A DNA stretch of 64,000 nt from Octopus sinensis (GCF_006345805.1 NC_043021.1:5518001-5582000), one strand, 5' to 3'. Counted from the stretch's first letter, positions 323 to 50,518 are shown. The notes: generated from the letters alone by a model not told the origin. Translations and numbers: made by a program.

Positions 323-1199
323 ACATAAACTGAGAGAGAAAGGGGGGGAAGGTGTCAAAATGTCTTATGCCAAATAAGTCAGCAATGCCAAATAGGTGGG
401 CACCAGTGTGGCCGTACCAAAACGTCTCATAACCAGTTTTCTTTGTTACTAAAATACTTGATGGCAATCTAAAGATTTCAAGATTAATCTGCATCGTAGA
501 GACATTTTGTGTTCTGTGTTCGACATTTCTGTTCTTGTTGTGTTTAGATTAGTTTTAATGTATGGTAGTTTAGTTGTGTTTCATTAACCAAGCTTATTGT
601 AGCTGAGGTGGCTGATCTGGTCTGGTCCTCCAGACACAGCAAGTAGCCCCTCTTACTGAATGGCTTCAAATCAAGCAAAAGAATGTAGTGTATATGTAGA
701 TGTGTGTGTCTGTATATGAAGAGGGAGAGAGAGAGAGAAGTGAGCACATGTCTGTGTGTGTGTGAATGCACATGTATACATGTATCTGTGTATGTGAACA
801 AATGAATGTAGCACTCAATACATTTTGTTGGTCTTACATGTATTTAATAGCAATTTTACTCAGTTCTACATTACTCAAGGGTGTAGAACACATCCATATC
901 ACCAGATGTATACATGAGTTTATGTGTGTGTATATACATATATATTAAAATAAACTCTGATTTTTCTTTTTTACAGGTTCGCATAAAACCCCAGAGTTTT
1001 GCCTCTGTAAGCCTTTTTCAGACTTGAAAAAAGCCTCCAGTAGCAAAGCCTGATGCCTTTTTAACTATGCATAATAAATCTGACTCTAATACCAGTATTG
1101 AGTCCTTTCATTAGTAAATGTTTGTTGATATTAATAGCATACACCCCCACCCACATATAATGAGAGAGGTATGTGTGTGTGTCTGTGTATGCATATATG

Positions 1200-1246
<47 letters not shown>

Positions 1247-1289
1247 ATAGAAAAGGTAAGACAACAAAAGAATGAAAGAGACCTCGATA

Positions 1290-1480
1290 TTATGTAAATA
1301 TATGGGACAATTATTTGGTAGCCATGATAAAACTCTTGAGTTTTGGATGTCAGAGCGGAAACCTACCTTGTTTTGTTATTTTGATGGATGGATGGATGAA
1401 TGGGTAAGTAGGTAGATAGATATCCGAAACTCAGAGTTTTATCATGGGTACCAAATAATTGTCACATATTATATTTACAT
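1290..1480. mobile_element. Degenerate Penelope-like inverted repeat (~57-bp arms)
   Basis: 1292-1348 and 1422-1480 are reverse complements; the right arm has GAAACTCAGAGTTT, a hammerhead 3' half. Confidence 0.55.
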
Positions 1481-1619
1481 ATATATATATGTATATATAT
1501 AAATAAAATTAGGTGGGTTTCATTCTTGTGAGTGTGCATTATTTGAATCTGTGAGTTATTTGCTTGTGTAAATATATATATATAATATATATATATAAAG
1601 TTATGCATATATATATATA

Positions 1620-1663
<44 letters not shown>

Positions 1664-2164
1664 AGGTGGTGCTATTAAGTTAGACATGGCCGAAACCTAT
1701 CAAAGTATATATATAGATAGATAGATAGATATTTCTCTGTTATTATCTATGTAAACAGTGTACATTTGTATAGGCATTGACATACATCTGTATGTGTGTC
1801 CATTTCTGCAACAATTAACATCACCTTTGTATAGATATACAGCATACACATGTCATAGACATATATAGCATGCGACATCACACCAATGTACACAGAGAGA
1901 GAGAGAGAGTGTGTGTCCAGTTCTAAAAAATTTGTCTCAAGAAATTTGCTCTGAATCCTGAGAGAATGGCTGATATTGATGGTGACTAGCTAGTACTGCA
2001 CTGATGAGATTTAACTGAATGAAACCACCACCACCCATCCACCCTACATGTTACACCTGAATTATCGTCAAAATGGATGTAGATCATTGCCGTAGTAGCA
2101 TTCTGTACCCAAAGTTGAGTGGCATAAATTTGTGTAGCCATTGGTCTTAGCCAGGCTGTAACAC

Positions 2165-2359
2165 AAGATGTAAAAGGCACCCATGCCAGTGACATGTAAA
2201 AGACACCCAATATAGGAGTGGTTGGAAGGGCATCCAGCCATAGAAACCAAGTCAAAACAGACAACTGGAGCCTGGAGCAGCTCTCTGGCTTACCGGCTCT
2301 AGTCAAGCCATCTAACCCATGCCGGCATGAAAAAACAGACGTTAAAATGATGATAATGA
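2165..2359 (+). mobile_element. RTE-tail element (family A)
   Basis: Same motifs and (GAT)n tail. Confidence 0.75.
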
Positions 2360-2704
2360 TTTGTGTTGTTTATGCATCGAGGGAATATGGCTGTTAAATC
2401 TTGCAGGTCAAGTAGCCACATAGAAACCCCCTTGTTGTTTCCATGATGATGATGATGATGTGATGATATCAACAAAGTACCTCAATGATCAAATTAGATT
2501 CGGCCCACGCTTGCTGTTGTGAAAATAATTGTGTTAACGTTCACCACCAGGCTGTATGCCTGTTCTTGTGCATCTATCAATGCTTCTAATATGCTAAAGT
2601 GTAAGATCTCTGTGTGTTTCTATATGTCTTGTGTGTAAATCCGTAAGCTAGTCTGTTTATCTGTGTTTCTGTCTGCCTGGATATATCTATGTGTCTATCC
2701 ATTT

Positions 2705-2769
2705 CTGTCTGTCTCTCTCTCTCTCTCTCTCCCCCATTTCCTCTTCCTCTCTACCTCTCTACCTCTCTC

Positions 2770-2801
<32 letters not shown>

Positions 2802-2888
2802 CCATTTCCTCTTCCTCTCTACTTCTCTCTCTCTCTCTCCCCCATTTCCTCTTCCTCTCTACTTCTCTCTCTCTCTCTCCCTCTCCCC

Positions 2889-2928
<40 letters not shown>

Positions 2929-3050
2929 CCATTTCCTCTACCCCTCTCTCTCTCTCTCTCCCCCGTTTCCTCTTCCTCTCTACTTCTCTCTTTCTCTCTG
3001 TATGTGCCTCTGCATCTCACCATCTCTCTCTGTCTTGTTGTTTCTGTCTG
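2705..3050. repeat. (CT)n compound repeat with a recurring cccatttcctcttcctctctac motif
   Basis: Direct reading. Confidence 0.9.
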
Positions 3051-3231
3051 TCTGTCACTTTAATCTCCCCCATCTGTCTGCCAGCAATAATGTCTAACTT
3101 TTAGTTGAAAACTTTGTGGTTATGTACTACTACTACTACCACTAGTAATAGTTAGTCGTATTACTAGTAGTAATAATAATACTATTACTACAACTCTATT
3201 ATAACTTATAAGCATCAGTTCTGTAGTTACT

Positions 3232-3520
3232 GTTGTTTTTAGCCCCTGGTCAGCCTGGATTTTCCAGCTAGGACCATCCCATTTACATATACATTCAGGT
3301 ACTACACTATATTGCTCAATGTGTCCTTCCTAGGTTTTGGCTGCTATTTTTAGTAAATATTGCAGCTCCCTATCAAAAGTACTCCAGCTGGGACCATCCC
3401 ATATACTTAAATCTACAGGGACTCTATTGGCCATTGTGTAATTTCTTTTTTAAATAGTAGGCTTTGGCTGCTGTTTCTAGTAAATATAGCGGCATATAGA
3501 GACACCCTCATTGGTCTGTA
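3232..3520 (+). mobile_element. Old unclassified repeat family J (two tandem partial units); relatives at about 5222-5440, 9770-9975, 16010-16130(-), 23420-23590 and 32960-33170(-)
   Basis: Recurrent gaccatccca / ttggctgctatttctag motifs. Confidence 0.5.
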
Positions 3521-5506: not shown

Positions 5507-5671
5507 GGTGCAGGAGTGGCTGTGTGGTAAGTAGCTTGCTTACCAACCACATGGTTCCGGGTTCAGTCCCACTGCGTGGCACCTTGGGCAAGTGTCTTCT
5601 ACTATAGCCTCAGGCCAACCAAAACCTTGTGAGTGGATTTGGTAGACGGAAACTGAAAGAAGCCCGCTGTA

Positions 5672-5711
<40 letters not shown>

Positions 5712-13032: not shown

Positions 13033-13632
13033 TTAACCCTTTAGCATTTAAACTGGCCATGTCCAACCAAAATATTTTACCCATTTTAGGCTTAAACCAG
13101 CCAAATCCTGCCTCTCACAATTCCCCTTTATTATGATTCTAAAAGCAACCAACCATGTCATTGGAATCTCAAAGCTGTGAGGTGATGCATGATTGATTCA
13201 AAACAATACTCTTACTCCTTTACTTGTTTCAGTCATTTGACTGTGGCCATGCTGGAGCACCGCCTTTAGTCGAGGAAATCGACCCCCAGGACTTATTCTT
13301 TGTAAGCCTAGTACTTATTCTATCGGTCTCTTTTGCCGAACCGCTAAGTTACGGGGATGTAAACACACCAGCATCAGATGTCAAGCAATACTAGGGGGAC
13401 AAGCACAGACACACAAACACACACGCAAAAATATATATATATATATATACACATATATACAGTGGGCTTCTTTCAGTTTCCATCTACTAAATCTACTCAC
13501 AAGGCTTTGGTCGGCCCGAGGCTATAGTAGAAGACACTTGCCCAAAGCGCCACGCAGTGGGACTGAACCCGGAACCATGTGGTTGGTAAGCAAGCTACTT
13601 ACCACACAGCCTCTCCTGCAATGTGAATAAAT
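13033..13632. mobile_element. piggyBac-type MITE split by a family B SINE
   Basis: ttaaccctttagcattt...aaacaat [SINE] gtgaataaat, continuing the sequence seen at 26640-26670. Confidence 0.65.
13212..13619 (-). mobile_element. SINE family B, young copy inserted into a MITE
   Basis: High similarity to 5507-5933; the MITE sequence resumes on the far side. Confidence 0.88.
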
Positions 13633-13976: not shown

Positions 13977-14092
13977 CCACATGAAATAAAGTGTCTTGCT
14001 CAAGGTCAACACGCAGCTGGGAATCACTCATGACCTTACAATTGCCAGCCAAATGAACTAACCACTAAGCCACATGCCTTCACTCTCTCAAA
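13977..14092 (-). mobile_element. SINE family H head, inverted relative to 13643
   Basis: Reverse complement aligns to 13643-13760. Confidence 0.7.
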
Positions 14093-14399
14093 TCATCATC
14101 ATCATTGTTTAACGTCCGTTCTCCATGCTAGCATGGGTTGGACGGTTCGACCGGGGTCTGGGAAGCCAGGAGGCTGCACCAGGCTCCAGTCTGATCTGGC
14201 AGTGTTTCTACAGCTGAATGCCCTTCCTAATGCCAACCACTTCGAGAGTGTAGTGGATGCTTTTTACGTGCCACCTGCACAGTTGCCAGTCAAGGCTGGC
14301 AAATGGCCACGGTCGGATGGTGCTTTTTATGTGCCACCGGCACGGGGGCCAGATGAGGCTGGCAACGGCCACGATCAGATGGTGCTTTTTACGTGCCAG
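14092..14399 (-). mobile_element. RTE-tail element (family A)
   Basis: Reverse copy with several GTGCCACCGGCAC hairpin motifs. Confidence 0.85.
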
Positions 14400-14610: not shown

Positions 14611-14869
14611 CTGTGCCGGTGGCACGTAAAATGCACCATCCGATTGTGGCCGTTTGCCAGCCTCGTCTGGCACGTAAAAAGCACCCACTACACTCACGGA
14701 GTGGTTGGCGTTAGGAAGGGTATCCAGCTGTAGAAACACTGCCAGATCAGACTGGAGCCTGGTGCAGCCTTCTGGCTTCCCAGACCCCAGTTGAACTGTC
14801 CAACCCGTGCTAGCATGGAAAGTGGATGCTAAACGAAGATGATTATGATGATGATGATGATGATGATGA
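14611..14869 (+). mobile_element. RTE-tail element (family A)
   Basis: Near-consensus copy with (GAT)n tail. Confidence 0.85.
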
Positions 14870-16137: not shown

Positions 16138-16837
16138 ACAAGCGTGGCTGTGTAGCTAAGTTGCTCACTTTTTGTAACTACATGGTTTTAGGTTCAATCC
16201 CTCTGCAGGGCACTTTGGGCAAATGTTTTGTACTCTGACTCTGGGTTGATCAATGCCTTGTAGGTGATTTTAGTAGATGGGAATTGTGTGTGTGTGTCCT
16301 CTAGCTGTTTTATAACTGATGTTGGTTTGTTTACATTCAGTAGCTTAGTTCAGCCTAAGAGTTCAATGGAATGAGTAACAGACTTAAAAAATATAAATAT
16401 TAGGGTTGGCGTGTTCAACTAAACCCTTCAAGTTAGTGCCCCAGCATGGCCACAGTCCAAAGACTAAAACAAAGATAAAAAGGAACTACAACAATCTAGG
16501 GACAGACATGGCTGTGTGGTAAGAAGCTTGCTTCCCAATTTCATGGTTCCAAGTTCAGTCCCACTGCATGGTACCTTGGGCAAGTGTCTTCTACTATAGC
16601 CCTGGGCTAACCAAGGCCTTGCAAGTGGATTTGGTTGATGGAAACTGAAAGAAGCCTGTCGTGTATGTCTGTCTGTCTGTCTGTGTTTATCCCCCAGCAC
16701 TGCTTGACAACTGGTGTTGGTGTGTTTATGTCCCTTAACTCAGCAGTTTGGCAAAAGAGACAGGTAGAATATGCACCTGGCTTTACAAATAAATAATAAG
16801 TCCTGGGAGTCAATAAGTTCGACTAAACTTCTTCAAG
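16138..16837 (+). mobile_element. Two tandem SINE family B copies (16138-16482 old; 16500-16837)
   Basis: Both show the head, CORE-like block and 3' module. Confidence 0.75.
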
Positions 16838-17060
16838 ATAAAAGTGTTGATGGCTACAACCATCAACACCGTCACTACCACCAGCAATAACACCAACACC
16901 CCAATCCTCCACCTATTCACCCCCTACCATCCCCATTAATATAAACCTTCTCTACCACCACCACCACCACTTTCACCCTCCCACATCCCCTGCTCTACTA
17001 TCAAACCTGTCCTTTTACCTATATTTTCCACCTACACTATATATATATACATACATATAT

Positions 17061-17165
17061 ATCATCATCATCATCATCATCATCGTTTAGCGTCCGTTTT
17101 CCATGCTAGCATGGGTTGGACGGTTCTACTGGGGTCTGTGAAGCCAGAAGGCTTCATCAGGCCCA
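17061..17165 (-). mobile_element. RTE-tail element (family A), truncated at a TA tract
   Basis: (CAT)n-cgtttagcgtccgttttccatgctagcatgggttggacgg. Confidence 0.8.
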
Positions 17166-17284
17166 TACATATATATATGTATGTATATACATACACACAT
17201 ATATATATAATGTGTGTGTATATACATACATATATATATATGTATGTATATACATATATTATATATAATATATATATATATATG

Positions 17285-17315
<31 letters not shown>

Positions 17316-18045
17316 GTTATTATATATAATATATATATATATGTATGTATATACATATATATATATGTATGTATATACATATATATATAGGTATGTATAT
17401 ACATATATATATATGTATGTATATACTATATATATATGTATATACATACATATATATATATGTATGTATATACACATATATATGTATGTATATACATACA
17501 TATATATATATATGTATATACACATATATATGTATGTATATATATATATATAATGTATATACATTATATATATATGTATGTATATACATATATATATATG
17601 TATGTATATACATATATATATATGTATATACATACATATATATATATATGTATGTATATACACATATATATGTATGTATATACATACATATATATATATA
17701 TGTATATACACATATATATGTATGTATATACATATATATATATATGTATATACATATATATATATGTATGTATATACATATATATATATATGTATGTATA
17801 TACATATATATATATATGTATGTATATACATATATATATATATATGTATGTATATACATATATATATATATGTATGTATATACATATATATATATATATG
17901 TATGTATATACATATATATATGTGTGTGTATGTATATACATATATATATGTGTGTGTATGTATATACATATATATATGTGTGTGTATGTATATACATTAT
18001 ATATATGTAAGTATGTATATACGTATATATATATATATATATATA
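17166..18045. repeat. ~880-bp (TA)-rich compound microsatellite
   Basis: Direct reading. Confidence 0.95.
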
Positions 18046-18173
18046 TTTATTATATAGAAGGAGCTTCTACAGGACTAGAACTGTTTCATTCAAGAGAAAT
18101 CTTCAGGGCTTCCTGAAGATTTCTCTTGAATGAAACAGTTCTAGTCCTGTAGAAGCTCCTTCTATATAATAAA
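18046..18173. mobile_element. Perfect 62-bp-arm palindrome, Penelope-like remnant
   Basis: Arms 18046-18107 and 18112-18173 are exact reverse complements; 4-nt loop GCTT. Confidence 0.85.
18108..18156 (+). ncRNA. Minimal type I hammerhead ribozyme motif
   Basis: GCUUC-CUGAAGA-U(UUC ucuu GAA)U-GAA(ACAG uucuaguc CUGU)A^-GAAGC: 5-bp helix I, canonical core, GUA triplet. Confidence 0.65.
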
Positions 18174-21824: not shown

Positions 21825-22088
21825 GAACTGCTAAGTCATGGGAACATATACAAACAAACTCTGGTTGTCAAGCAATAATGGGGGACAAATGTAAAGTTAC
21901 ACACATAGATATATACATATATATATTCAGGAACCTTCTTTCAGTTTCCATCTACCAAACCCTCTCACAAGGCTTTGGTTGGTCCAGGGCTATAGTAGAC
22001 AACACTTGCCCAAGGTGCCATGCAGTGGAACTGAACCCAGAACCATATAGTTTGGAAGTGAACTTCTTACCACACCACCGTGCCTGTG
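21825..22088 (-). mobile_element. SINE family B, 3'-incomplete
   Basis: cacttgcccaaggtgcc and ttctttcagtttccatctacc motifs. Confidence 0.75.
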
Positions 22089-22952: not shown

Positions 22953-23349
22953 CTTTTACTCTTTTACTTGTTTCAGTCATTTGACTGCGGCCATGCTGGA
23001 GCACCGCCTTTACTCGAGCAAATCGACACCGGGACTTATTATTTGTAAGCCCAGTACTTATTCTATCGGTCTCTTTTGCCGAACCGCTAAGTGACGGGGA
23101 CGTAAACACACTAGCATCGGTTGTCAAGCAATGCTAGGGGGACAAACGTACGCACACACATATATATATATATATATACATATATACGACAAGCTTCTTT
23201 CAGTTTCCGTCTACCAAATCCACTCACAAGGCATTGGTCGGCCTGGGGCTATAGCAGAAGACACTTGCCCAAGATGCCACGCAGTGGGGCTGAACCCGGA
23301 ACCATGTGGTTGGTTAGCAAGTTACTTACCACACAGCCACTCCTGTGCC
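22953..23349 (-). mobile_element. SINE family B, full length
   Basis: Aligns end to end with 5507-5933. Confidence 0.88.
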
Positions 23350-25548: not shown

Positions 25549-25779
25549 GGCGGCAAGCTGGCAGAAACGTTAGCGTGCCGGGCGAAATGCTTAGTGGTAA
25601 TTCGTCTGTCGCTATGTTCTGAGTTCAAATTCCGCCGAGGTCGACTTTGCCTTTCATCCTTTCAGTGTCGATAAATAAAGTACCAGTTACGCACTGGGGT
25701 CGATGTAATCGACTTAATCCATTTGTCTGTCCTTGTTTGTCCCCTCTGTGTTTAGCCCCTTGTGGGTAGTAAAGAAATA
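25549..25779 (+). mobile_element. SINE family C, full length with probable target-site duplication
   Basis: TGGCAGAAACG A-box-like, GAGTTCAAATTCC B-box, central gcctttcatcctttc..gtcgataa.taagtacc block (resembles conserved invertebrate SINE central domains; I cannot say which from memory). Flanks atatactagagatacaa / atgtactagagatataa. Confidence 0.88.
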
Positions 25780-25862
25780 TGTACTAGAGATATAAGAGAT
25801 ATATGCACCCCCTATATAGGCATACATACACATTTGTGAATATATTTGTACATTCGTATGTA

Positions 25863-25975
25863 AAGGCATGTGGCATAGTGGTTAGGAGTGTTGCATTCAC
25901 AATTGTAAGGTGAGGGTTTCAATTCCCATTATGTTCTTAAGTAAAGCACTTCATTTCCTGTAGCTCCAGTTTATC
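25863..25975 (+). mobile_element. SINE family H-related 5' fragment
   Basis: aaggcatgtggcatagtggttagg...aagcacttcatttc. Confidence 0.55.
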
Positions 25976-28970: not shown

Positions 28971-29195
28971 CGAGCTGGCAGAATCGTTAGCACGCCGGGC
29001 GAAATGCGTAGCTGTATTTCGTCTGCCGTTACGTTCTGAGTTCAAATTCCGCTGAGGCCGACTTTGCCTTTCATCCTTTCGGGGTCGATAAATTAAGTAC
29101 CAGTTACGCACTGGGGTCGATGTAATCGACTTAATCCGTTTGTCTGTTCCTTGTTTGTTCCCTCTGTGTTTAGCCCCTTGTGGGTAGTAAAGAAA
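28971..29195 (+). mobile_element. SINE family C inserted in a (CAT)n tract
   Basis: Near-full-length match. Confidence 0.88.
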
Positions 29196-36819: not shown

Positions 36820-37007
36820 CTGTGCCGGTGACACATAAAAGCACCCACTACACTCATGGAGTGGTTGGCGTTAGGAAGGGCATCCAGCCGTAGAAACACT
36901 GCCAGATCAGACTGGAGCCTGGTGCAGCCTTCTGGCTTCCCAGACCCCAGTTGAACCGTCCAACCCATGCTAGCATGGAAAGCGGATGCTACACGATGAT
37001 GATGATA
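36820..37007 (+). mobile_element. RTE-tail element (family A)
   Basis: Near-consensus copy. Confidence 0.85.
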
Positions 37008-38200: not shown

Positions 38201-38761
38201 TGTGTGTGTTTAGTTATGTGTGTGTTCGTATAATGCCCAAATAAGTGTGTACATATCAGTTCACATATGTGTATTCAGAATTTATACATGTTAATGTATG
38301 TATGTATGTGTGTGTGTATGTGTGTGAATCTATGTATACACACATTCACACACACATGAGTGTATGTGTGTTTATTTGTAAAACTTGTGCACTTTTGTGC
38401 ATGTATGCACATATGTAATGTCATTGTTTTTGTTTGTGCATATATATCAGTTTTTATAAATACTCCAACACTCTATTTTGTATATGTGTGTGTATGTGTA
38501 TGTGATAGGTATAAAAGATGTATATTTTGACAAAAAAAAGTTCCAATATCTTTTGACTGTTTTTTTTTTGTTTTTCTTTATATTATCAGAATTGATGGGG
38601 AGGTAACAACGGTGACCTCTGACCTTATCCGCCTGAGGTTGTTTGACCCAAACTGCGACTGGTCTTATAACAGTTTCATCTACGTCCCCCAAAAAAACAC
38701 CAAAACAAAAAGCAAAACAAAACAAAAAAAAATCCCTCCCTGTCATCTAAAATTCTTCTTT

Positions 38762-38795
38762 GCACCAAATTCTTCTATTTTGTTGGTTTAGCCAG
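38762..38795 (+). other. Splice acceptor region upstream of the giant ORF (tandem AGs at 38790-91 and 38794-95)
   Basis: Pyrimidine tract ttcttctattttgttggtttAG|ccAG|cggtcATG. The in-frame TAG at 38789-91 overlaps the first AG, so any N-terminal extension must come by splicing. A further acceptor-like site lies at 38588-89. Confidence 0.5.
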
Positions 38796-38800
38796 CGGTC

Positions 38801-41800
38801 ATGTATTCTATGTCGCAAACCACTTTAGCCGAGCGAGAGGGCCGAGAGAATCAAACACACAGCCGCAATAGCTCGGCGCCGTTTGTTCGGACACATACAT
38901 TGACCTCTGGCAGGATGGCCAGTTTCTCAGAAAATGGAAAGTTTTCGCATTTAGAGCACCGGTTGAATAACACTTCACAGACCTCAACCGGGGTCGAGAA
39001 TGATCAGAGTTGCTGCACTGACAGAAAGAGGGGGACTAAGACAACTGTGAGACATTCCAATTTCCAGTCTGAACTGGATTCTGTACTTAAAGCTAGATCA
39101 ACTCCGATCAAGAAAGCACCACAAATTCCGGCCCTTAGAGGTAACCCTAACAATCCGAACTCTTCTTCCACTTTTGAAACCATTCCTAACTCATCTGCAG
39201 GTAGCATTAGTAGTGTAAATAGGAAACAGTCACCAGCCCATAGCCTTTCAGATCAACCCGTATCATTTAGAGTAGCAGCCGCACCTGTACAAACGCATGC
39301 TCCTCCTTCACCCCTACCTCCTCCGCTTGACCTTCCCCCACCGCCGAATCTCCCCCGCCTCTCAGGGCCCCACCCACCAACTCGTAGTGCTTCATTGAAT
39401 GTCAAAACAGGTCAAATGTCAAATAATTTGAACAGCTCCCCATTTCGGCAGTCTGGCCGTGCGAGGTCTTCAACGAAAGGGAGCCACACGAGTAGCATCT
39501 TGAGGTCTGGCTTTTTGGATACGTCAGATCTGGAAGACTGTCGGACACCCGAGATCAGTGAACTGAATTTCTCTATAGGACACGGTACACCCGTTGCATC
39601 AGAAAGCGGATCAAGAAGCATCCAACAGCCTGCCCCCTCAGTGGATTCAAGCAGGTTTGCCTTGACTTCAAAACCAACAAGCAAAATCGATGAGCCCATC
39701 CCAGTGTATCTGAAATGCCAGACTTGGTGCAACAAAATACCTGATGCTGGAGGCAAAAAGGCACCCGTCCCTCAACCAAAAATGAGTGAAGAATTGCGAA
39801 ACATTGAATCATTTGAGTCAGCAATGTTGGACTGGTTTCAGACTATTACACAGGCAAATGACACAGATGACTTAAGATCAGAAACGTCAGTGAGTTCTGT
39901 TGGTTCGCGCAAGTCCGAATGTCGGCTCCGGTCAATCATATCCAACCGTTTCCAAACATCAGACCAAATTGAGAATGTTCTCACTGATTTACTGGCTGTC
40001 TCTGATCAATATGCACAGCTGACTGATTCAGAGTCTATAGGCCCAGCAGCTTTGGATCCTCTGGAATCAAGATATCGAACTTTTGGTCGCAAGCCTGGTT
40101 CAGCTCCCCGGTCCCGAATGTTCCGAAGAACTTCTGGATATCGAAGCGGGGATATGTCTGAAACAGAGTCCGATTCGGAGAGACCTGCACATCCAAGTAG
40201 TTACAAGACCGTCTTATCCGAACTTCAGGCAGTTTTGAGGAAAAGAAAAGTCACACCGAAAACGCCGTCTGTGGAATCTGGTTTGGGTTCCTCTGAAAAT
40301 TCTATGAAAGCTACCTCTGAGACCATGTCACCACCTATTTCCAGGCAGAGCAAAGCTTCAACCCCTCCTGCTCCACCTCCTAAACCTCAGATGGCAAAGG
40401 TACATGAAGCTAACCCAGATTCAGTCCAAACAGCCAGTAAAACCCAACGACGGCCATTAGTGAATCCAGGTGATTTTCAAGTTCTGCTGGGTGAATTAAG
40501 CACAGCATGGTCTAAGCGTCTCAGAAGAATACGGAAAGCTCAGGTAGTCTCACAGAGAGGAGGGGAAAGTTCACTGTATGCCAACTTCCAAGGGTTCCGT
40601 GTCCCTGAAACTCTGGCCAGCGATACATCATCAAAATATAAGAACTTTGAAGGTGTTCGGACTCCAGCTGAATCAATAGCTGAAGAAGATGCTGAAGATC
40701 TAAAAAATTATGAGAGTTTCGAAGCAAGAAAATCTAAATTTATGGCTAACAGCTCATCACGTCAATACGAAAGTGATCAAGAATATACAAGACCTTCGTT
40801 TGGCAGAATTCGGGGTCCTGGCATGAATAATGACATGGTGCGGCCCTCGAGGGTGTCTGTCAGAAAGCAAGCATTCCAGTCTCCAAATGAAAACCAGTCA
40901 AGGAGGAAACCTGATCTGGAGACGTGTTCACTCCAATCTTTTAGTGTCCGGCCTATTTCCAAAATGCAGAACAATGTTGGAAGTGCTGTTGTCAGTGATA
41001 ATGAATTTGATGATCGAAATGAGGGTTTTCGGAGGCATCGGTCACGGCATAACCCTGAACAACGTCGTATATGGCAAAACATTGAGTATATTCAGGTTAA
41101 TTCACGACAGACTCCTTCAAGACATGGTTCTGAGCAAAGTCTTCCACAGCTAATGACAGAATCACAGGGTCGGCCACGACGGCGTGAACGTACTCCCCAA
41201 ATTGTTGAAAACCAGTCTTCCCAGCAGCCTCTTCAACATTCTCAGTCAAGAGATGATGTCAGTTGCTCTTCCCTTCACCTTTCTAGGGATGTTTCATCCA
41301 AACCAAAAGTGGATGAACAGATCCCCTCTCCAGAAGATAGCAAGGAACAACCAAAGCATGAATCTTCTACAGTATTAACATTGTCCAATAGCAACCAAGG
41401 TCCAAAAGTGAAAGCAGTCAGTCAAAAGACAGACACTAAATCTGAATTTCATAAAAGAATTGAGCAAATTTCAGCTGATGATTCCAATAGATCTGCTGAC
41501 CCAGAAGCAAGGAAATTCTTGGTAGCTGGTGTAACAGATGTATCAAAGCAGCTACAGTCTGCAATTTCTGAAGCAACAGAGAAACCAGCACCACCAAGTA
41601 TGAAGTTATCTCCACCAGTTAATCAGAACATTGAACCCACCAAGGCACCAAACACTGATCATATGAATGTTGGGGAGGAAAAGGAGATTATTTTAGAAAG
41701 GCTACAGAAAATTGGAGATGCTAAATTTGTCAGCAAAGAAGAACTCCCAGATTTGCCAATGGATATTGTTAAAGCCAGTGCCATGATAGTAAAACCGTTA

Positions 41801-44800
41801 GTTACATCCAATCTGAAAAAATTAATTGGTGGTGGAAAGGAAGAAGAGAAACCCAAAAGCTTGGGAAAGTCTGAAGTAGTTCTTAATTTCTCTGAGACAG
41901 CTGTGCAAGAGCAGACAGTTCTGTCAGAATACGAAGACAATGTCATTTTGGGTGGCATTGAAGACAAATTAGTACTAGAAAAGAAACCAGATACTTCTGA
42001 TGGATTTGATATGGATAACAGCAGAATCTTGTCTGAAATGAATGTTGACCAAAAGATATCCCTGGAAGAGCCTAGTGAAAGTGAGCCTGTTATCAGTGAG
42101 GCCAAAGTTGAAATTACATCTACAAAAACTACAGCCATCACGGTACTTCAAAGTTCAGTCTCTGAAGAAACCAAAGCAAGTGATACTGTATTAAAGAGTG
42201 AAGGTATTACTGAAGATCAACAAGCAACAGATGGTTTGGTGGAAGATGCTGAAGATCAAGTGACTTCATCAAATATTTCTATCAGTTTAGATCATCCTGT
42301 CATAGGAATGGAAAATGTTGAAGAAAGTGACCAAGAAACAAAACACAAATCTGAGACTGTTCTCTTCCTTCCTTATACAAAAGAACCACAACAGAATGAA
42401 GTCAGTGAACCTCAACCTGTCACTGTAGACAGTTTGAAGTCATCAACTGTTGTCTTGTCTTCAATAAACACAGAACATTCCTTACCTTCTGAAAATCTCC
42501 TCATTGATTCCTTAACATACGAGAACAGTAAAGAACAAACTGAGAACTTAGAGGTAACACCTGAAGAAGCGAGTAGTATAGAAGTTGTACCAATGTCACA
42601 AGACCTGCCAGTGATACAAGATGCCAAGGTTTCTTCAGCACAAATTGAATTAGGCCAATCAGAAGACAACATCGAAGAAATAACTAATGTGTCTGTGACA
42701 TTATCTCTGGGTGGAAATTCTGATTTAAAGAAGCCAGAAGAGTCAGTGCTTAAACCAGAAGAATCACTGGTTATACCAGAAGAATCACTGGTTATACCTG
42801 AAGAATCACTGGTTATACCTGAAGAATCACTGGTTAAACCAGAAGAGTCACTGGTTAAGCCAGTAGAATCACTGGTTAAGCCAGAAGAATCACTGGTTAA
42901 ACCAGAAGAGTCACTGGTTATACCTGAAGAATCACTGGTTATACCTGAAGAATCACTGGTTATACCTGAAGAGTCACTGACTAAGCCGGAAGAGTCACTG
43001 ACTAAGCCGGAAGAGTCACTGGTTAAACCAGAAGAATTACTGGTTAAACCAGAAGAATCACTGGTTATACCTGAAGAATCACTGGTTAAACCAGAAGAGT
43101 CACTGACTAAGCCGGAAGAGTCACTGGTTAAACCAGAAGAATCACTAGTTATACCAGAAGAGTCACTGACTAAGCCTGAAGAGTCACTGGTTAAACCGTA
43201 TGAAAAAGATGAAGAAAAGGAATCTTTGGATGTGAAACAAATTTCTTGTGAGCAAGAAGACAATCAGATTGAACATGACCAACTTGTTGAAGAGAACGGT
43301 TTGAAGAAGAGTGAGGCAGAAGGAAGCAAACAAGAAACATCTGATATCTCTGAGATAATGGATACGTTTGATGACTTGCAGAAGGAATTGAGATTAATGG
43401 AATCTTCTTTGGAAGAAAACTCTGCAAAAGGTCCAACGATAGAGAGTATGCTTCAGGAGGCGTTGGTAAAGACGTATTCAATTGATGTTCTGTCACAGTT
43501 GAATCAATCTGATGAGGATAGCTTTGAACCAGGGATAATCTGTGGTCAGTGGATTAAGAAGGGGACAACAGTTAGATCTGAAAGTTCAGTGGTGAAAGAG
43601 GAATTCAGGCATGAAACTCAAGTCATAGATTTTGGGGAAGAATTGGTAAATGCTGGAGACCTGGCAGATTCTGTTTCAGAGCAATTAGACAGTGGTGAAG
43701 GTGAGTTGAAAACTGAAAATCTTGGTTTTGTAGAGCACGAGGAATTTGATTATGTTCAGAAGATCCCTAGTGATTTCATAGAAGATGAAATCTATGACAA
43801 TGTTCCAAGTGTAACAGAGGGTTCCATCCCATTTGTATCTGCTGAATCAAAGTCACCTGATGCATTGCTAACGAAGGAGGAAGAAGAACATGCAGAAAAA
43901 ATGATTCCCAGTAACATAATGTCTATGGAGACTGTAACATCTTCGAGAACATCATTTGTCTTGGAGGAAACATCTGTTCCAGCTGTATTAGAGTTTGAGG
44001 CATCCATTTCAGGGCCAACCAATTTGGAAACCTCCGCTCAGGCAACAGCAGGACTTGAACCAACGTATACCTTGACACCATTAGAGCAAGACAGTTGTAT
44101 TGTGGAACCAGCTCCAATGGTAACTCATAGAGGGATGGAGCCACCTACAGAGGTGTCAACAAGGCTGGAATCATACATGGAGTCATCAGCAGACCTGGAG
44201 TCGCATATACAAACATCAATAGACCTGGAGTCATGTACAGAAACATCAGTAGAATTTGATTCACCTTCAGTAGAATTATCAGAAAAACAGCAAGCACCCA
44301 TCGATGCATCTGCAGAGCTGGAGAGGCTTAGAATGGCACTGGCACAGATGGAGCCATCAAGTGTGATACCTCCACAGATGGAGCCATCGTCTGAGGCACA
44401 ATCACAACTGGAGGCTCTTAGAATGGCACTGGCGCAAATGGAGCCATCAAGCGCAACACCTCCACAACTGGAGTCCCCAAGCGCAGTACCTCCACAACTG
44501 GAGCCGTCGTCTGAGGCACAATCACAACTGGAGGCTCTAAGAATGGCACTGGCACAAATGGAGCCAGTAAATGCAACGCCTCAGCAACCAGAGCCATCAA
44601 ACGTCACGCTTCCACAGTTGGTGCCATCAGCCACGGCACAGTCACAACTGGAGAAACTTAGTATGGCACTGTCACAAATGGAATCATCACCTGCAGCTCT
44701 CCCACGGCTGGAGCCATCGGCTGTGGCACAGTCACAGTTGGATAAACTTAGTTTGGCACTGTCACAAATGGGGTCATCATCAGTGGCATCTTCACAGCTG

Positions 44801-47800
44801 GAGCCAAGAACAGTGGCATTATCTGAATTGGAATCATCCATTGAGGCTGTACCAACGGAGTTGCAGCTGTGTACCATGCAGGTAACAGAGGTGGAGTCGT
44901 CTACCACAGGAACAGTGGGGGTGTTCACTTTAAAAGAGCAACAGCAGATTCCTGAAATGGAAAAATCTCTTCCATTAACTGATGAGGTTGTTACTGAAGC
45001 TGCACTTTTGGTTGATGCCTCAAACAGTGAACCGCTTGAGATTCCTGTTGAAATCCATGCTGAGGTGTCTGTTGCTGATGAGCAGTTAGTACCAGATTTG
45101 GAACTGACCGAGACACAACCCGTCTCAGCAACTCCCCTTCATAAACTGCCCCAGGAATCCACTGACAATGATCCCTTGTGCAGCTCTGAAGTAACAGTAA
45201 CAAATCAAGCTGTTCTGGATGAACGTCTGACCCCTTGTTATCCTGAAACACGTGATGTGCAGAATGTTGCAGAACAGTTGGTGCCAGAAGTGGCAACGCA
45301 TCAGGCAGAGAAGTTTCCATTGTTTACAATAGAAACTGCACAGCCATCATATGAACCCGCAGACTTTGTGGCACCCTCTGAAATATTAATAGGTGAAGCC
45401 GAGTCTGAGACACAGGAAGTGTCAAAGGCACTTGAGGAGCCTGAAATATCTAACTTGGCAGCAAATGCACAGGAAGGGGTTGCAAATGATTTTAGCTTTG
45501 AGACTAAACATGTAACAGATGAAAGTAATTATTTAGAAAGAATTGATATAATCAGTCGAGATCTTCACAATTTAATGCCAGTTACCAAAGTTGACATTGC
45601 TGAAGAATTAACTGGCAATCTCTCTGATAGTTCTGATGAGATATTTCAAGACACACTTTGCGACAATTCTCCTATGTTTCGCCGAAAATACACGGAAATT
45701 GTTCGTGCAGAAATTGGAACCAGAATGGAAACACTTCACACTTATCAGAGAGACTTATTGTTGGAAATTGAGGAAGATGATGATGAAGAATTTGTTGAAG
45801 CTGAAGGAGAGGCTATGTGCTGGGAGTCTCTGAAAGAGTCTTGGAATATCCAGGGAACTTTGGAAACTCAAACAACTGTAGAGAAGTGTGATGATGATGA
45901 TGATCGATCTCTTCCGACCATTTATGAAGCAACTGAAGACCGAACGGAAGCTGTTGTTAGCAAGACTGTTGATGTCTTTGAGGGATTGGAATCAGCTGCA
46001 AATCAGTGTGTTGAGAACCTTGAGAAAACCTCCACAGAATTGGCTCTGGCAGAAGCTGATGAAATATCCATCTATTATGGGGCTGAAGTGACTGATTCTG
46101 CTGAGTGTAAGGAAGAACACGATGTCCTTGACAATGCTGTCATGGTAGAAGGAGATAAAGAACTTGTTGAAGCACTTCCTAGCTGTGAAGAACACGATGT
46201 CCTTGACAATGCTGTCGTGGTAGGAGACGATAAAGAACTTGTTGAAGCACTTCCTAGCTGTGAAGAAATAGAAGATGAATCAAAGACGGTTCAGCTAAAT
46301 GAAATGAAACGATCTGAAGCAATTACTGACTTTGGTAAAATATCTGAGAAAGAAACAGTCACAGTGAAAGAGTTTGAAGAATTTTCTGGTGAGCTATCAT
46401 CTGAAACTCCTCTCATGAAATCTGATGAGAGTTTTGGAAATCTAGTGCAATACTTGGAGTCAGATAGCATCAATGATCTTGAGGAATTTGAGCGTATTGA
46501 ATTGGCATGTGAGGAACTTTCTAAGAACAAGCTTGTAGATCTCCAAGACATGTCAAACAAAGATGAATGTGTTGAAAAGACTGAAAAGCCTCACAAAGCT
46601 AACGGTTTAGAGGAATCTTCAGACTCAGACACTATGAAGAGCCAGCAGATAATTTTAACCAAGGAATTAGAAGTAGATGAGGGTGATGAATCTGCTGATT
46701 TAATGGTTGATGCCAGTGATGCAATTAACAGAGTGAAGACCAAAGTCAGTGAACAAATATCTGTGTCTCTTCTGCAGAATAACGAGGAAATTGAAGTGGA
46801 AGATCAGATTGATTATTATGATTATATGAGATTAAGGAGCTGTGAAGAAGAACAAGTTCATGCTGCTCTCCACAGTGAGGGTGGATTATCTGAAAATGGT
46901 GAGATTAATAACAAGGATGGAAAAGTGGAACATGGAAGAGAAGTTGCTCAGAAAATATCTGTTGTTACTTCTGAACAAAATGTAGAAATAGCTGCATCTG
47001 CTGCACCGGGTGATGCATCGTTTGCAGATTATTGCAGTGAAGATGTCTCTGAGAATATTACCAGAAGTGTTTGTATTGACAATGTTACCAGAAGTGTTTG
47101 TGTTGACAATGTTGATGTGGTGAAGGACATCAGAATGGAGTCTTATTCCAAAGATAGTGAAAATGGTGAGGTACTGAAAATCGATGCCTTGAACTCCACC
47201 AATCTTTCTATTAATGCTAATGAGATATCTATCACTACAACTACAGAAGCAAATTCTATTGAAGAATCCATCAGAGCAGAAAATGGCTTGTCTGAAAAGA
47301 CAGGTTTTGTTACATCAGAAGAAAATTCCACAGAGATGGAACTGCTGGAAATCTCTGCCAAACAAGAAACATCTTTGTTGGATGACAGCAGCAATTTAAG
47401 TGGTGAAACTGTGAAAGATAACCAATGTGATATGGTGGTTGACATCAGTGTCATTAACAGTGAAGTTAAAGAAGAACAGAAGGTCCCATGTCCAGTTGAT
47501 TTGTCTGGTGTTGAAACACAAACCCTGGTGATCAATGAAAATATGGTTTTGGAATTGCCAGAAATTGATGCTGACTTGAATGTCAGTTCTGAACAGTCTT
47601 CACCAGAAAGCAGTTCTTCCGTTTCAATTTCCCAAACTGCTGACAAAGAATTCCAACAAGACCAGCTTGAAGATTTGAAAGACAACACTTCAGAATTGTC
47701 TCAAATCCAAGAGAATAGTGAGACAACAGCCGTTGCCACCACAAAGAAGAAAAGGAGAAGGAAGGCAAAGAAAAACAAAAACAACAAAGATAAACATGAA

Positions 47801-50518: not shown

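What the first reader, a model, noticed from the sequence alone, without database searches (positions are those of the whole stretch)
38801..50518. 11.7-kb single-exon ORF encoding a 3905-aa charge-segregated protein with no recognisable domain
Seen: a basic Ser/Pro/Arg-rich N-terminal ~900 aa, a ~2300-aa Glu/Asp-rich middle built partly from at least five independent tandem-repeat expansions, and a Ser-rich, basic C-terminus. It is free of the microsatellites and TEs that saturate the flanks, which implies purifying selection. Inference: a giant disordered spacer/scaffold with binding motifs at both ends, possibly lineage-specific.
Basis: partly seen in the sequence, partly recalled or inferred. 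Interest (0 to 1): 0.78.

Follow-up and report, generated by a model that had tools for sequence, protein, structure and literature searches.

The report
Giant disordered orphan octopus protein gene
This is a real gene, kept intact by selection, that encodes a 432-kDa mostly unstructured octopus protein with a hugely acidic repeat-filled middle and a conserved C-terminal anchoring module; a near-identical copy is already annotated as an uncharacterised "titin-like" protein in Octopus bimaculoides, and no function is known.

Summary
Window 38801-50518 (+) is one uninterrupted 3,905-codon ORF (chance about 1e-85). It has no micro-satellites (14.8 expected) and no SINE-like repeats, both of which fill the flanks. 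It contains six in-frame tandem arrays. The charge is blocked: aa 1-1010 pI 9.5, aa 1011-3330 pI 4.07 with net charge -363, and a basic C-terminal tail. Pfam and PDB sequence searches find no domain. It is not unknown to databases: Octopus bimaculoides A0A0L8GVT1 / XP_014777632.1 ("PREDICTED: titin-like", 3,635 aa) is its ortholog, 90.5% identical over 3,581 aa, with the same charge architecture. Neutral drift to that identity would add about 21 stop codons, so the frame is under selection. A profile search of 1.84 billion proteins found only one further relative, a 3' fragment from an unidentified species. That fragment shares the last ~440 aa (34-40% identity), including a predicted three-helix block and a polybasic tail ending KFWK. 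The repeats turn over fast; the ends are somewhat better conserved. My best reading is a lineage-restricted, intrinsically disordered block-polyampholyte tether or spacer, anchored by its C-terminal module. The gene's reality is shown. The mechanism is inferred and untested. Interest is modest.

The parts
38770..38791 (+). Candidate 3' splice site (TTCTTCTATTTTGTTGGTTTAG) ending 9 nt before the ATG. Its AG is part of the in-frame TAG that closes the frame upstream.
   Evidence: Read directly from the sequence. Not verified with transcripts.
38801..50518 (+). Complete coding sequence: 3,905 aa plus stop, 432 kDa, pI 4.49.
   Evidence: Ortholog P0002 in O. bimaculoides is 90.5% identical over 3,581 aa.
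38801..39415 (+). Residues 1-205, absent from the O. bimaculoides gene model, which starts at the equivalent of M206. Probably coding.
   Evidence: Codon log-odds are +0.19 in frame, against -0.49 and -0.74 off frame and -0.66 to -0.85 for upstream DNA. P(205 codons open by chance) = 3.5e-5.
38801..41830 (+). N-terminal Ser/Pro/Arg-rich, mildly basic block (aa 1-1010, pI 9.5, net +24). Predicted disordered, with isolated helices.
   Evidence: 92.4% identical to the ortholog. No homolog found outside Octopus.
39287..39388 (+). Proline-rich cluster (PPSPLPPPLDLPPPPNLPRLSGPHPPTR) with PxxP and LPPPP motifs.
   Evidence: It matches only the Pro-rich linker of Cordon-bleu (E = 0.007), which is compositional.
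39056..39100 (+). Copy 1 of a recurring helix-plus-basic motif (SNFQSELDSVLKARS).
   Evidence: Read from the sequence. Not statistically tested as a repeat.
40196..40255 (+). Copy 2 of the motif (SSYKTVLSELQAVLRKRKVT). Lies within a 46-aa run that is perfectly conserved in the ortholog.
   Evidence: AF2 predicts a helix at aa 469-480.
40469..40543 (+). Copy 3 of the motif (GDFQVLLGELSTAWSKRLRRIRKAQ).
   Evidence: AF2 predicts a helix at aa 556-586.
41831..48790 (+). Acidic block (aa 1011-3330, pI 4.07, net charge -363).
   Evidence: The ortholog has net -335 over the same block, and identity is 89.3%.
42734..43197 (+). 22 x 21-nt array encoding PEESLV[KI], PEVK-like in composition. Present in both octopus species.
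   Evidence: pN/pS between copies is 0.33-0.36.
44184..44253 (+). 2.3 x 30-nt array (SSADLESHIQ / TSIDLESCTE).
44327..44832 (+). Compound 90/120-nt array: about five copies of a unit containing AQSQLEALRMALAQME plus a Pro/Ser linker.
   Evidence: pN/pS between copies is 0.33-0.59.
46112..46267 (+). 2 x 75-nt duplication. The second copy is absent from O. bimaculoides.
47050..47113 (+). 2.4 x 27-nt duplication (NITRSVC). One copy is absent from O. bimaculoides.
47744..47794 (+). Polybasic island KKKRRRKAKKNKNNKDK inside the acidic block, NLS-like. Conserved in the ortholog.
48310..48588 (+). 9.3 x 30-nt array encoding QDETSQQLT[IN]. A young, species-specific expansion: there is an 80-aa gap in O. 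bimaculoides.
   Evidence: pN/pS is about 0.75.
49190..50515 (+). Conserved C-terminal region (aa 3464-3905), shared with the distant homolog.
   Evidence: BLASTP to L001: 34% identity over 466 aa, E = 1e-49. Profile search. The last 342 aa are 95.0% identical to the ortholog, against 89.3% for the middle, P = 6e-4.
49619..49789 (+). Predicted three-helix block (aa 3607-3663) containing the invariant KRFRDLKHFSRISN-TYNEV. It overlaps the longest perfectly conserved run (aa 3611-3702).
   Evidence: pLDDT reaches about 73, from a two-sequence alignment.
50384..50404 (+). Invariant ESIYEDV motif, a candidate phosphotyrosine, YxxPhi or LIR-type short linear motif.
   Evidence: Its function was not tested.
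50444..50515 (+). Polybasic-aromatic C-terminal tail KREKKSKKLSSRLKKFGSKLKFWK (net +9 over the last 36 aa). LKKFGSKLK and the terminal KFWK are shared with the distant homolog.
   Evidence: Amphipathic-helix moment is not significant here (p = 0.23) and marginal in the homolog (p = 0.036).
50651..51284 (+). Candidate polyadenylation hexamers: ATTAAA at 50651 and 50998, AATAAA at 51065 and 51279.
   Evidence: Pattern match only.

Best explanation
The locus is a genuine protein-coding gene restricted to octopuses and at least one more distant, probably cephalopod, species. It is the ortholog of O. bimaculoides XP_014777632.1.

The whole coding sequence appears to lie in one 11.7-kb exon, probably preceded by a non-coding 5' exon.

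The product is a 432-kDa cytoplasmic protein without signal peptide, transmembrane segment or known domain, and it is largely intrinsically disordered.

It is a block polyampholyte with three parts:
- a Ser/Pro/Arg-rich, mildly basic N-terminal ~1,000 aa studded with PxxP/LPPPP motifs and short helices;
- a ~2,300-aa polyanionic middle (net about -360) that grows and shrinks by in-frame tandem-repeat expansion;
- a conserved C-terminal ~440 aa holding a short three-helix block, Ser-rich linear motifs and a polybasic-aromatic tail.

Inferred mechanism: the C-terminal module, and probably the N-terminal motifs, dock the protein to partners or to an acidic surface such as the inner-leaflet membrane or cytoskeletal filaments. 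The acidic middle acts as a long, highly charged, self-repelling spacer or bristle. Its bulk properties (length, charge, flexibility) are what selection preserves, not its exact sequence.

Shown: the ORF, its selective maintenance, the conserved charge architecture, repeat turnover, the better-conserved C-terminal module, and the lack of known domains.

Inferred: disorder, cytoplasmic location, docking, and the spacer role.
For: Reality and selection:
- A 3,905-codon ORF has log10 P = -84.9 by chance.
- The ortholog P0002 is 90.5% identical over 3,581 aa, and the alignment has 17 internal gaps. Both sides are intact ORFs, so every length difference is a whole number of codons.
- A neutral simulation at equal amino-acid divergence gives about 21 stops, and 0 of 200 runs stay open.
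- No micro-satellites or SINE-like repeats lie inside the ORF, against 14.8 micro-satellites expected.
- All six arrays have periods divisible by 3.
- pN/pS between copies of the older repeats is 0.33-0.59.
- In the distant homolog, polymorphism is 6 synonymous to 3 non-synonymous over 1,510 nt.

Architecture:
- Charge blocks, z = 5.2, reproduced in O. bimaculoides as N +15, middle -335, C -6.

Selection on bulk properties of the middle:
- Array copy numbers differ between species: the QDETSQQLT array has 9 copies here and about 1 there, and the 25-aa and 9-aa duplications are specific to this window.
- The net charge of the middle block is nevertheless maintained.

Ends better conserved: N 92.4%, middle 89.3%, last 342 aa 95.0% (P = 0.013 and 6e-4).

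C-terminal module conserved at long range:
-.
- The stop codon is in the same place, and the homolog's frame is open upstream through its own different repeats in all 11 contigs.

Disorder and no domains:
- Pfam; PDB.
- AF2 mean pLDDT is 44 and 38, with only isolated helices.
- The maximum 19-aa hydropathy is 1.04, so there is no transmembrane segment.

No other exon-like sequence exists in the 38.8 kb upstream or 13.5 kb downstream.
Against: - No expression data could be consulted, and no binding or localisation evidence exists.
- The disorder call rests on composition and on AF2 runs with one or two sequences. Such runs give low confidence even for folded proteins.
- By the charge-hydropathy criterion, several stretches of the middle sit on the order/disorder boundary.
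- The N-terminal block is only weakly basic, and its motifs (PxxP, LPPPP, RVxF-like) occur at roughly chance frequency for a protein of this length.
- The tail is not a significant amphipathic helix in this species.
- Identity differs only modestly between the ends and the middle (92-95% against 89%).
- True dN/dS against O. bimaculoides could not be computed, because its DNA was not retrievable.
- An upstream coding exon cannot be excluded, because an acceptor-like site sits 9 nt before the ATG.
Confidence: 0.45

Rival explanations
1. The ORF is the giant terminal exon of a larger multi-exon gene. Its upstream exons, beyond the 38.8 kb of 5' flank in this window, would encode recognisable domains, as with the giant exons of ankyrins, MAP1B or AHNAK-type genes. 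In that case the real identity of the protein is set by those exons.
For: - A polypyrimidine tract plus AG lies 9 nt upstream of the ATG.
- The 9 nt after the AG read in frame as PAV-M, so a phase-0 junction would extend the frame.
- The exact 3,905-aa product, and six alternative-start versions of it, are not on record in a collection of 15 billion proteins. This is compatible with a different annotated gene model in the source species.
Against: - The O. bimaculoides protein carried under both the UniProt and the RefSeq names starts inside this ORF, at the equivalent of M206, and has no extra N-terminal sequence.
- No exon-like open segment exists in 38.8 kb upstream.
- The ATG has a purine at -3.
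- An acceptor just before the start codon is the usual layout for a non-coding first exon.
Confidence: 0.15
2. It is a nuclear or chromatin-associated polyanionic protein. The KKKRRRKAKKNKNNKDK island would act as a nuclear localisation signal. The acidic block would bind histones or other basic proteins, in the manner of the acidic tracts of nucleolin or nucleoplasmin, or of other histone-chaperone-like disordered proteins.
For: - A strong classical NLS-like cluster at aa 2982-2998 is conserved in the ortholog.
- There is an RKRK at aa 480.
- The protein has an extreme net negative charge.
- There are 88 CK2-type sites in the middle.
Against: - No nucleic-acid-binding or chromatin-binding domain is present.
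- The most conserved part is instead the C-terminal module with a polybasic-aromatic tail. That tail is typical of peripheral membrane or cytoskeletal association, not of nuclear proteins.
- A single basic island in 3,905 aa is weak evidence.
Confidence: 0.12
3. It is a secreted or extracellular acidic repeat protein, for example a matrix, adhesive, egg-case or biomineral-associated protein. Its signal peptide would be encoded by an upstream exon outside the window.
For: - Asp/Glu/Ser-rich, repeat-expanded, rapidly evolving and lineage-restricted proteins are characteristic of molluscan matrix proteins. This is established knowledge and was not tested here.
- The acceptor-like site upstream of the ATG leaves room for a leader exon.
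Against: - The N-terminus as read has no hydrophobic leader. The most hydrophobic 19-mer in the whole protein averages only 1.04 on the Kyte-Doolittle scale.
- Cysteine content is 1.0%.
- The O. bimaculoides model has no leader either.
- The conserved features (PxxP, LPPPP, a Ser-interspersed polybasic tail, YEDV) are of cytoplasmic type.
Confidence: 0.06
4. It is a non-functional accidental ORF, or an annotation or assembly artefact, for example a recently expanded satellite that happens to be open.
For: No expression evidence was available here, and about 13% of the ORF is tandem repeat.
Against: - Log10 P of chance openness is -84.9.
- It is intact in a second species at 90.5% identity, where about 21 stops are expected under neutrality.
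- The C-terminal module is conserved at 34-40% in a third, distant species, with an excess of synonymous polymorphism there.
- Its codon composition differs from the flanks.
Confidence: 0.01

Closest known systems
Octopus bimaculoides uncharacterised protein A0A0L8GVT1 / XP_014777632.1 ('PREDICTED: titin-like')
   Same: It is the ortholog: 90.5% identity over 3,581 aligned residues. It has the same order of blocks, the same charge architecture, the same PEESLVK and LE arrays, and the same C-terminal module and tail.
   Different: The model is 3,635 aa and starts at the equivalent of M206. It lacks most of the QDETSQQLT array and the 25-aa and 9-aa duplications, and it has several small insertions. 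It carries no functional information. The name is an automatic one.
Titin / connectin (PEVK spring region)
   Same: The 22 x PEESLV[KI] array is rich in Pro, Glu, Val and Lys and cannot form a helix. This resembles the PEVK entropic spring and is probably the source of the automatic 'titin-like' name. It may likewise act as an extensible unstructured segment.
   Different: There are no immunoglobulin I-set or fibronectin-III domains and no kinase domain. The array covers only 155 of 3,905 residues. There is no detectable sequence homology.
Giant-exon neuronal and cytoskeletal spacers (MAP1B/Futsch, giant ankyrin inserts such as Drosophila Ank2-XL, AHNAK)
   Same: All are very large, mostly disordered, repeat-expanded polypeptides encoded by a single huge exon. 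Their conserved ends dock, and their variable middle sets spacing. This is the best analogy for how the protein might work.
   Different: None of the defining domains of these proteins is present. The resemblance is architectural only, and is recalled from general knowledge, not tested by homology.
MARCKS effector domain, adducin tail and AKAP12 polybasic regions
   Same: The C-terminal 24 residues (KREKKSKKLSSRLKKFGSKLKFWK) are a Lys/Arg cluster interspersed with Phe/Trp/Leu and with serines. That is the composition of unstructured segments that bind acidic phospholipids or calmodulin and are released by phosphorylation. AKAP12 is also very acidic and largely single-exon.
   Different: There is no Pfam match to the MARCKS, WSK-motif or RII-binding families. 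There is no N-terminal myristoylation signal (the sequence starts MYSM). Lipid or calmodulin binding was not tested.
WH2-domain actin regulators (Cordon-bleu)
   Same: There is a weak PDB hit to Cordon-bleu (E = 0.007-0.05). Three short motifs combine a helix with a basic LRKRK-like end, loosely like WH2.
   Different: The hit aligns only the proline-rich linker of Cordon-bleu, not a WH2 domain. Pfam WH2 does not match. In motif 2, read directly from the sequence, the basic segment follows the helical part 2-3 residues sooner than in canonical WH2 as I recall it.

Membership tests
Titin / connectin | Arrays of immunoglobulin I-set and fibronectin type III domains | tested here: not met
   Pfam scan of the whole protein in overlapping pieces at E <= 1 gave no Ig or FN3 hit.
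Titin / connectin | C-terminal Ser/Thr kinase domain | tested here: not met
   No Pkinase hit.
Titin / connectin | PEVK-type Pro/Glu/Val/Lys-rich unstructured repeats | tested here: inconclusive
   The 22 x PEESLV[KI] array resembles PEVK in composition. The repeat unit is 7 aa, not ~28, and there is no sequence homology.
Ortholog group of O. bimaculoides XP_014777632.1 | Full-length collinear similarity | tested here: met
   90.5% identity over 3,581 aa, with 17 internal gaps in the alignment.
Ortholog group of O. bimaculoides XP_014777632.1 | Conserved C-terminal module (KRFRDLKHFSRISN-TYNEV ... ESIYEDV ... LKKFGSKLK ... KFWK-stop) | tested here: met
Ortholog group of O. bimaculoides XP_014777632.1 | Conserved synteny | not testable with these tools
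   The window has no neighbouring gene, and the O. bimaculoides DNA was not retrievable.
MARCKS / MARCKS-like | Pfam MARCKS family match with N-terminal myristoylation (MG...) and a central effector domain | tested here: not met
   No Pfam hit. The N-terminus is MYSMSQ. Only the composition of the C-terminal tail is similar.
AKAP12 (gravin/SSeCKS) | WSK motifs and an RII-binding amphipathic helix | tested here: not met
   No Pfam hit at E <= 1.
WH2-domain proteins | WH2 motif: amphipathic helix, linker, then LKKV | tested here: not met
   Pfam WH2 is absent. The Cordon-bleu hit lies on a Pro-rich linker only.
MAP1 family (MAP1B/Futsch) | Conserved N-terminal and C-terminal MAP1 homology regions and MAP1B repeats | tested here: not met
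   No Pfam hit and no hit among 1.84 billion representatives to the C-terminal profile other than P0001 and P0002.
Intrinsically disordered block polyampholyte (a physical class, not a homology family) | High fraction of charged residues with opposite charges segregated into blocks | tested here: met
   Fraction of charged residues 0.28. Blocks of +24, -363 and +6. z = 5.2 against shuffles. Conserved in the ortholog.
Intrinsically disordered block polyampholyte (a physical class, not a homology family) | Lack of stable tertiary structure | tested here: inconclusive
   AF2 mean pLDDT is 44 (two-sequence alignment) and 38 (single sequence), with pTM 0.17-0.25. The charge-hydropathy value is mostly on the disordered side but near the boundary in parts of the middle. 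Shallow alignments limit the inference.

The most novel reading that the evidence does not exclude
This gene and the fragment from the unidentified species define a previously undescribed, cephalopod-restricted family of giant tethering proteins. A small conserved C-terminal unit (three-helix block, phospho-regulated Ser-rich motifs and a polybasic-aromatic tail) would anchor a freely evolving, repeat-built polyelectrolyte chain of hundreds of nanometres contour length to membrane or cytoskeleton. This would be a lineage-specific solution to filament or membrane spacing in cephalopod neurons, muscle or skin.
Probability: 0.2. Interest if true: 0.55.

Novelty: new member of a known kind. Interest (0 to 1): 0.35.

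Why it matters
Cephalopod genomes are known for lineage-specific genes expressed in their novel tissues, and most of these have no assigned mechanism. This locus is a clean example. It is a very large orphan protein demonstrably kept intact by selection, with a fast-evolving repeat-built polyanionic core and a small, well-conserved C-terminal module that offers a concrete experimental handle. If the spacer/tether model holds, it would add an independent case to the short list of giant disordered cytoskeletal or membrane spacers (titin PEVK, MAP1B/Futsch, giant ankyrins). It would also show how such proteins are built quickly by in-exon repeat expansion. In practical terms, the automatic name 'titin-like' on the O. 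bimaculoides ortholog is misleading, and its N-terminus is probably truncated by about 205 residues. That said, giant lineage-specific disordered proteins are common in animal genomes, and nothing here overturns an expectation.

Tried and rejected
1. Pfam on the whole protein, in four pieces plus four pieces overlapping the boundaries, and on the homolog. Nothing reached a gathering score. The only sub-threshold hit (Phage_depo_C, 22-22.7 bits against a cut-off of 25) lies on the QDETSQQLT repeat and is spurious.

2. PDB sequence searches of all parts and of the C-terminal profile. These returned only the Cordon-bleu Pro-rich linker (compositional) and a nanobody at E = 0.64.

3. Word-indexed homology search with aa 1-950, and with an aa 296-700 two-species alignment. 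No hits. This tool also never returned the O. bimaculoides ortholog, so it appears blind to it, and its negatives are weaker than they look.

4. Retrieving O. bimaculoides DNA for dN/dS. Not on record.

5. Looking up the exact window protein and six alternative starts. Not in the collection.

6. Identifying the species behind the distant homolog (runs SRR29271467-87 and ERR12921341) from the literature. No paper lists those accessions. Neighbouring ERR numbers belong to Wellcome Tree-of-Life genome notes of many taxa.

7. Literature search for the ortholog's accession numbers and for 'titin-like' plus octopus. Nothing relevant.

8. The idea that the C-terminal tail is an amphipathic helix. The hydrophobic moment is not significant in this species (p = 0.23) and marginal in the homolog (p = 0.036). 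I describe it only as a polybasic-aromatic cluster.

9. The RVxF-type PP1 docking site (KTVTF, aa 3352). It occurs once, where by my own rough estimate from residue frequencies about two chance matches are expected. Not used as evidence.

10. Rfam and tRNA scans of the window. Nothing found.

11. Protein self-BLAST for internal repeats. It returned no off-diagonal pairs, probably for technical reasons. I relied on the DNA-level arrays instead.

12. Fold search was not run, because both models have pLDDT below 45 and would give meaningless matches.
Full report
**1. The observation**

The window holds a single uninterrupted reading frame at 38801-50518 on the + strand: 3,905 codons plus a stop, starting with ATG. 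Over the same span the other five frames hold 112-426 stops. With the stop frequency of the flanks (0.0488 per codon), the chance of such an open frame is about 10^-85.

Outside the gene, the longest ORF is 236 aa. Every ORF of 110 aa or more is a translation of a micro-satellite or of a dispersed repeat.

A codon model trained on the giant ORF finds no exon-like open segment in the 38.8 kb upstream or the 13.5 kb downstream. The top scorers are (GA)n/(TC)n translations and SINE-like copies.

The window holds 66 perfect micro-satellites and none is inside the ORF, against 14.8 expected (P = 4e-7). Several dispersed repeat families of 170-190 nt occur on both flanks and never inside.

Tandem Repeats Finder reports six arrays in the ORF, all with periods divisible by three:
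- 21 nt x 22
- 30 nt x 2.3
- a compound 90/120-nt array
- 75 nt x 2.1
- 27 nt x 2.4
- 30 nt x 9.3

**2. Composition and architecture**

The product is 432 kDa with pI 4.49. Its most common residues are Ser 13.6%, Glu 12.3% and Leu 8.0%.

| Block | Residues | pI | Net charge |
|---|---|---|---|
| N-terminal | 1-1010 | 9.5 | +24 |
| Middle | 1011-3330 | 4.07 | -363 |
| C-terminal | last 306 | 8.9 | +6 |
| Tail | last 36 | 10.25 | +9 |

A charge-segregation statistic lies 5.2 standard deviations above shuffles. 'Basic' ends is right but mild: both ends are polyampholytes with a small positive surplus.

There is no hydrophobic leader and no transmembrane-like segment. The highest 19-residue Kyte-Doolittle mean is 1.04.

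Pfam gives nothing above its thresholds for the whole protein, including pieces that overlap my cutting points. The one sub-threshold hit sits on the Gln/Thr-rich decamer repeat. PDB sequence searches give only the proline-rich linker of Cordon-bleu, a compositional match.

AlphaFold2 on the last 406 residues, with a two-sequence alignment, gives mean pLDDT 44. It predicts only three helices, at aa 3607-3663. On the first 1,010 residues, as a single sequence, it gives mean pLDDT 38, no residue above 70, and a scatter of isolated helices. These shallow-alignment runs cannot prove disorder, but they agree with the composition.

**3. Relatives**

I built a profile from the C-terminal 406 residues plus the one hit of the word-indexed search, and scored it against 1.84 billion representative proteins. 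It found exactly two proteins.

The first is P0002: *Octopus bimaculoides* A0A0L8GVT1 / XP_014777632.1, 3,635 aa, labelled 'uncharacterized' or 'PREDICTED: titin-like'.
- It aligns collinearly with residues 206-3905 of the window protein at 90.5% identity over 3,581 positions.
- The alignment has 17 internal gaps.
- The window therefore comes from a different, closely related octopus, and the gene is already present in public annotation without any function.

The second is P0001: a 366-aa gene call on short Logan contigs from about 20 runs of one SRA series plus ERR12921341.
- In all 11 contigs the frame stays open to the 5' end, through a different KQPAPVAP/Ser-rich tandem repeat. The contigs are the 3' end of another long repeat-containing gene.
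- BLASTP gives 34% identity over 466 residues (E = 1e-49), from window aa 3464 to the end.
- Invariant shared blocks are KRFRDLKHFSRISN-TYNEV, SSDSGI, SDSAV, YGRI, SLDY, VSFL, ESIYEDV and LKKFGSKLK, plus KFWK followed by the stop.
- I could not identify the species. No paper lists those run numbers.

No relative of the N-terminal block was found outside Octopus. That tool also failed to return the *O. bimaculoides* ortholog, so its negatives are weak.

**4. Selection**

- To bring an 11.1-kb coding sequence to 90.5% amino-acid identity by unconstrained substitution takes about 4.4% nucleotide change. That creates about 21 stop codons, and none of 200 simulations stayed open. The frame is intact in both species.
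- Both proteins are read from intact ORFs, so each of the 17 length differences must be a whole number of codons. This follows from the data; it was not a separate test.
- Between copies of the older arrays, pN/pS is 0.33-0.36 (PEESLVK) and 0.33-0.59 (the LE array). The young arrays are near neutral on very few changes: 0.75 and 1.9. These copies are not independent, so the figures are indicative only.
- In the distant homolog, polymorphism among the 11 contigs is 6 synonymous to 3 non-synonymous in 1,510 nt. That gives pN/pS of roughly 0.2 by my own estimate from typical site proportions.
- Identity to *O. bimaculoides* is 92.4% in the N-terminal block, 89.3% in the middle and 95.0% in the last 342 residues (P = 0.013 and 6e-4 against the middle).
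- The longest perfectly conserved run, 92 aa, covers the three-helix block.
- The charge blocks are reproduced in *O. bimaculoides*: +15, -335, -6. Repeat copy numbers differ. The QDETSQQLT array has about nine copies here and about one there, and two duplications are private to this species.

Overall, selection clearly maintains the frame and the overall charge architecture. It is somewhat stronger on the C-terminal module. It tolerates rapid repeat turnover in the middle. A proper dN/dS was not possible, because the *O. bimaculoides* DNA could not be retrieved.

**5. Gene structure**

The in-frame stop three codons upstream of the ATG is the TAG of TTCTTCTATTTTGTTGGTTTAG. This is a good polypyrimidine-AG acceptor ending 9 nt before the ATG. 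The simplest reading is a non-coding first exon further upstream. An in-frame coding exon cannot be excluded.

The *O. bimaculoides* model begins at the equivalent of M206. Here the 205 codons before it are open (P = 3.5e-5 by chance). They score as coding in frame: +0.19 per codon, against -0.49 and -0.74 off frame and -0.66 to -0.85 for upstream DNA. They contain a proline-rich cluster and a first copy of a motif that recurs twice downstream. I therefore think the *O. bimaculoides* model is N-terminally truncated.

Candidate polyadenylation hexamers lie 133-761 nt after the stop.

**6. How it probably works**

What is shown:
- a giant protein without known domains or membrane-insertion signals;
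- a conserved block-charge layout;
- a fast-evolving, repeat-built polyanionic middle;
- a better-conserved C-terminal module made of a short helical unit, Ser-rich short motifs and a polybasic-aromatic tail.

What I infer:
- The protein is cytoplasmic and largely disordered.
- The C-terminal module is the docking end. Polybasic clusters interspersed with Phe/Trp and serines are the signature of segments that bind acidic phospholipids or calmodulin and are released by phosphorylation, as in MARCKS, adducin and AKAP12. This is general knowledge and was not tested here.
- The N-terminal PxxP/LPPPP and helix-plus-basic motifs provide further contacts.
- The middle is a long, self-repelling polyelectrolyte spacer or bristle. 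Its length and charge, not its sequence, are under selection, as in titin's PEVK region, the MAP1B/Futsch and giant-ankyrin inserts, or neurofilament side-arms.

I give this composite about 0.45. The existence and selective maintenance of the gene alone I put above 0.95.

Alternatives:
- the terminal exon of a larger gene with upstream domain exons (0.15);
- a nuclear polyanion using the KKKRRRKAKKNKNNKDK island as an NLS (0.12);
- a secreted matrix protein with an unseen leader exon (0.06);
- an artefact (0.01).

**7. Comparison with known families**

Membership in titin, MARCKS, AKAP12, WH2 proteins and MAP1 was tested through their defining domains, and none is met. The 'titin-like' label most likely comes from the PEVK-like composition of the 22 x PEESLV[KI] array. 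The only family it belongs to is the unnamed ortholog group defined by XP_014777632.1 and the Logan fragment.

**8. Novelty and verdict**

The locus is a correctly observed, real and selectively maintained gene, but not a new discovery as an object. Its ortholog is already in the public databases as an uncharacterised prediction, and I found no paper on it.

Giant lineage-restricted disordered proteins encoded by huge exons are a known kind. This is a new and uncharacterised member.

What this analysis adds:
- a conserved C-terminal module that defines the family;
- evidence of selection;
- rapid repeat turnover;
- a probable correction of the ortholog's N-terminus and of its misleading name.

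Interest: 0.35.

Noticed in passing
window 58347-59627 and 59630-60910: A perfect (100% identical) 1,281-nt tandem duplication separated by 2 nt. It is either a very recent duplication or an assembly artefact. It contains no convincing ORF.
   Followed up: partly
window 61414-62315; related copies at 25556-25895 and 28973-29147: A 184-nt unit repeated 4.9 times in tandem (94% matches), with dispersed relatives elsewhere in the window (75-91% over 175 nt; 68% over the longer 300-nt copy). It looks like a SINE-type element that has formed a local tandem array. ARAGORN and Rfam do not recognise a tRNA in it.
   Followed up: partly
window 5509-5698, 13423-13620, 16509-16690, 21891-22086, 23150-23345; and 14060-14281, 14668-14852, 17038-17162, 36837-37006, 57804-58025: Two further dispersed repeat families of about 170-190 nt, in both orientations and 76-95% identical. 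They are confined to the flanks of the giant ORF.
   Followed up: no
window 17165-18056 and 63114-64000: Very long micro-satellites: (AT)n of about 450 units, and (ATT)n of about 298 units that runs off the end of the window.
   Followed up: no
window 38693-38733 and 50563-50606: Similar (CAAAA)n-like A-rich tracts lie about 70 nt upstream of the ATG and 45 nt downstream of the stop. This could be coincidence (SINE tails), or a faint trace of a retroposed origin for the intron-less coding sequence. No target-site duplication was looked for.
   Followed up: no
window 42412-43263 (- strand): A 283-aa antisense ORF (SDSSGLT repeats) is simply the stop-free reverse complement of the PEESLVK array. 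It is not a gene.
   Followed up: yes
L001-L011 (Logan contigs, 5' ends): The distant homolog carries a different repeat (KQPAPVAPPSPSSSS, Pro/Ser/Lys-rich, not acidic) immediately upstream of the shared C-terminal module. So the repeat region differs in composition as well as in sequence between lineages. All assemblies break inside this array.
   Followed up: partly
tool behaviour: The word-indexed protein search never returned the 90%-identical O. bimaculoides ortholog, which the exhaustive search found at once. 'No hit' results from the word-indexed tool for this window should be read with caution.
   Followed up: no
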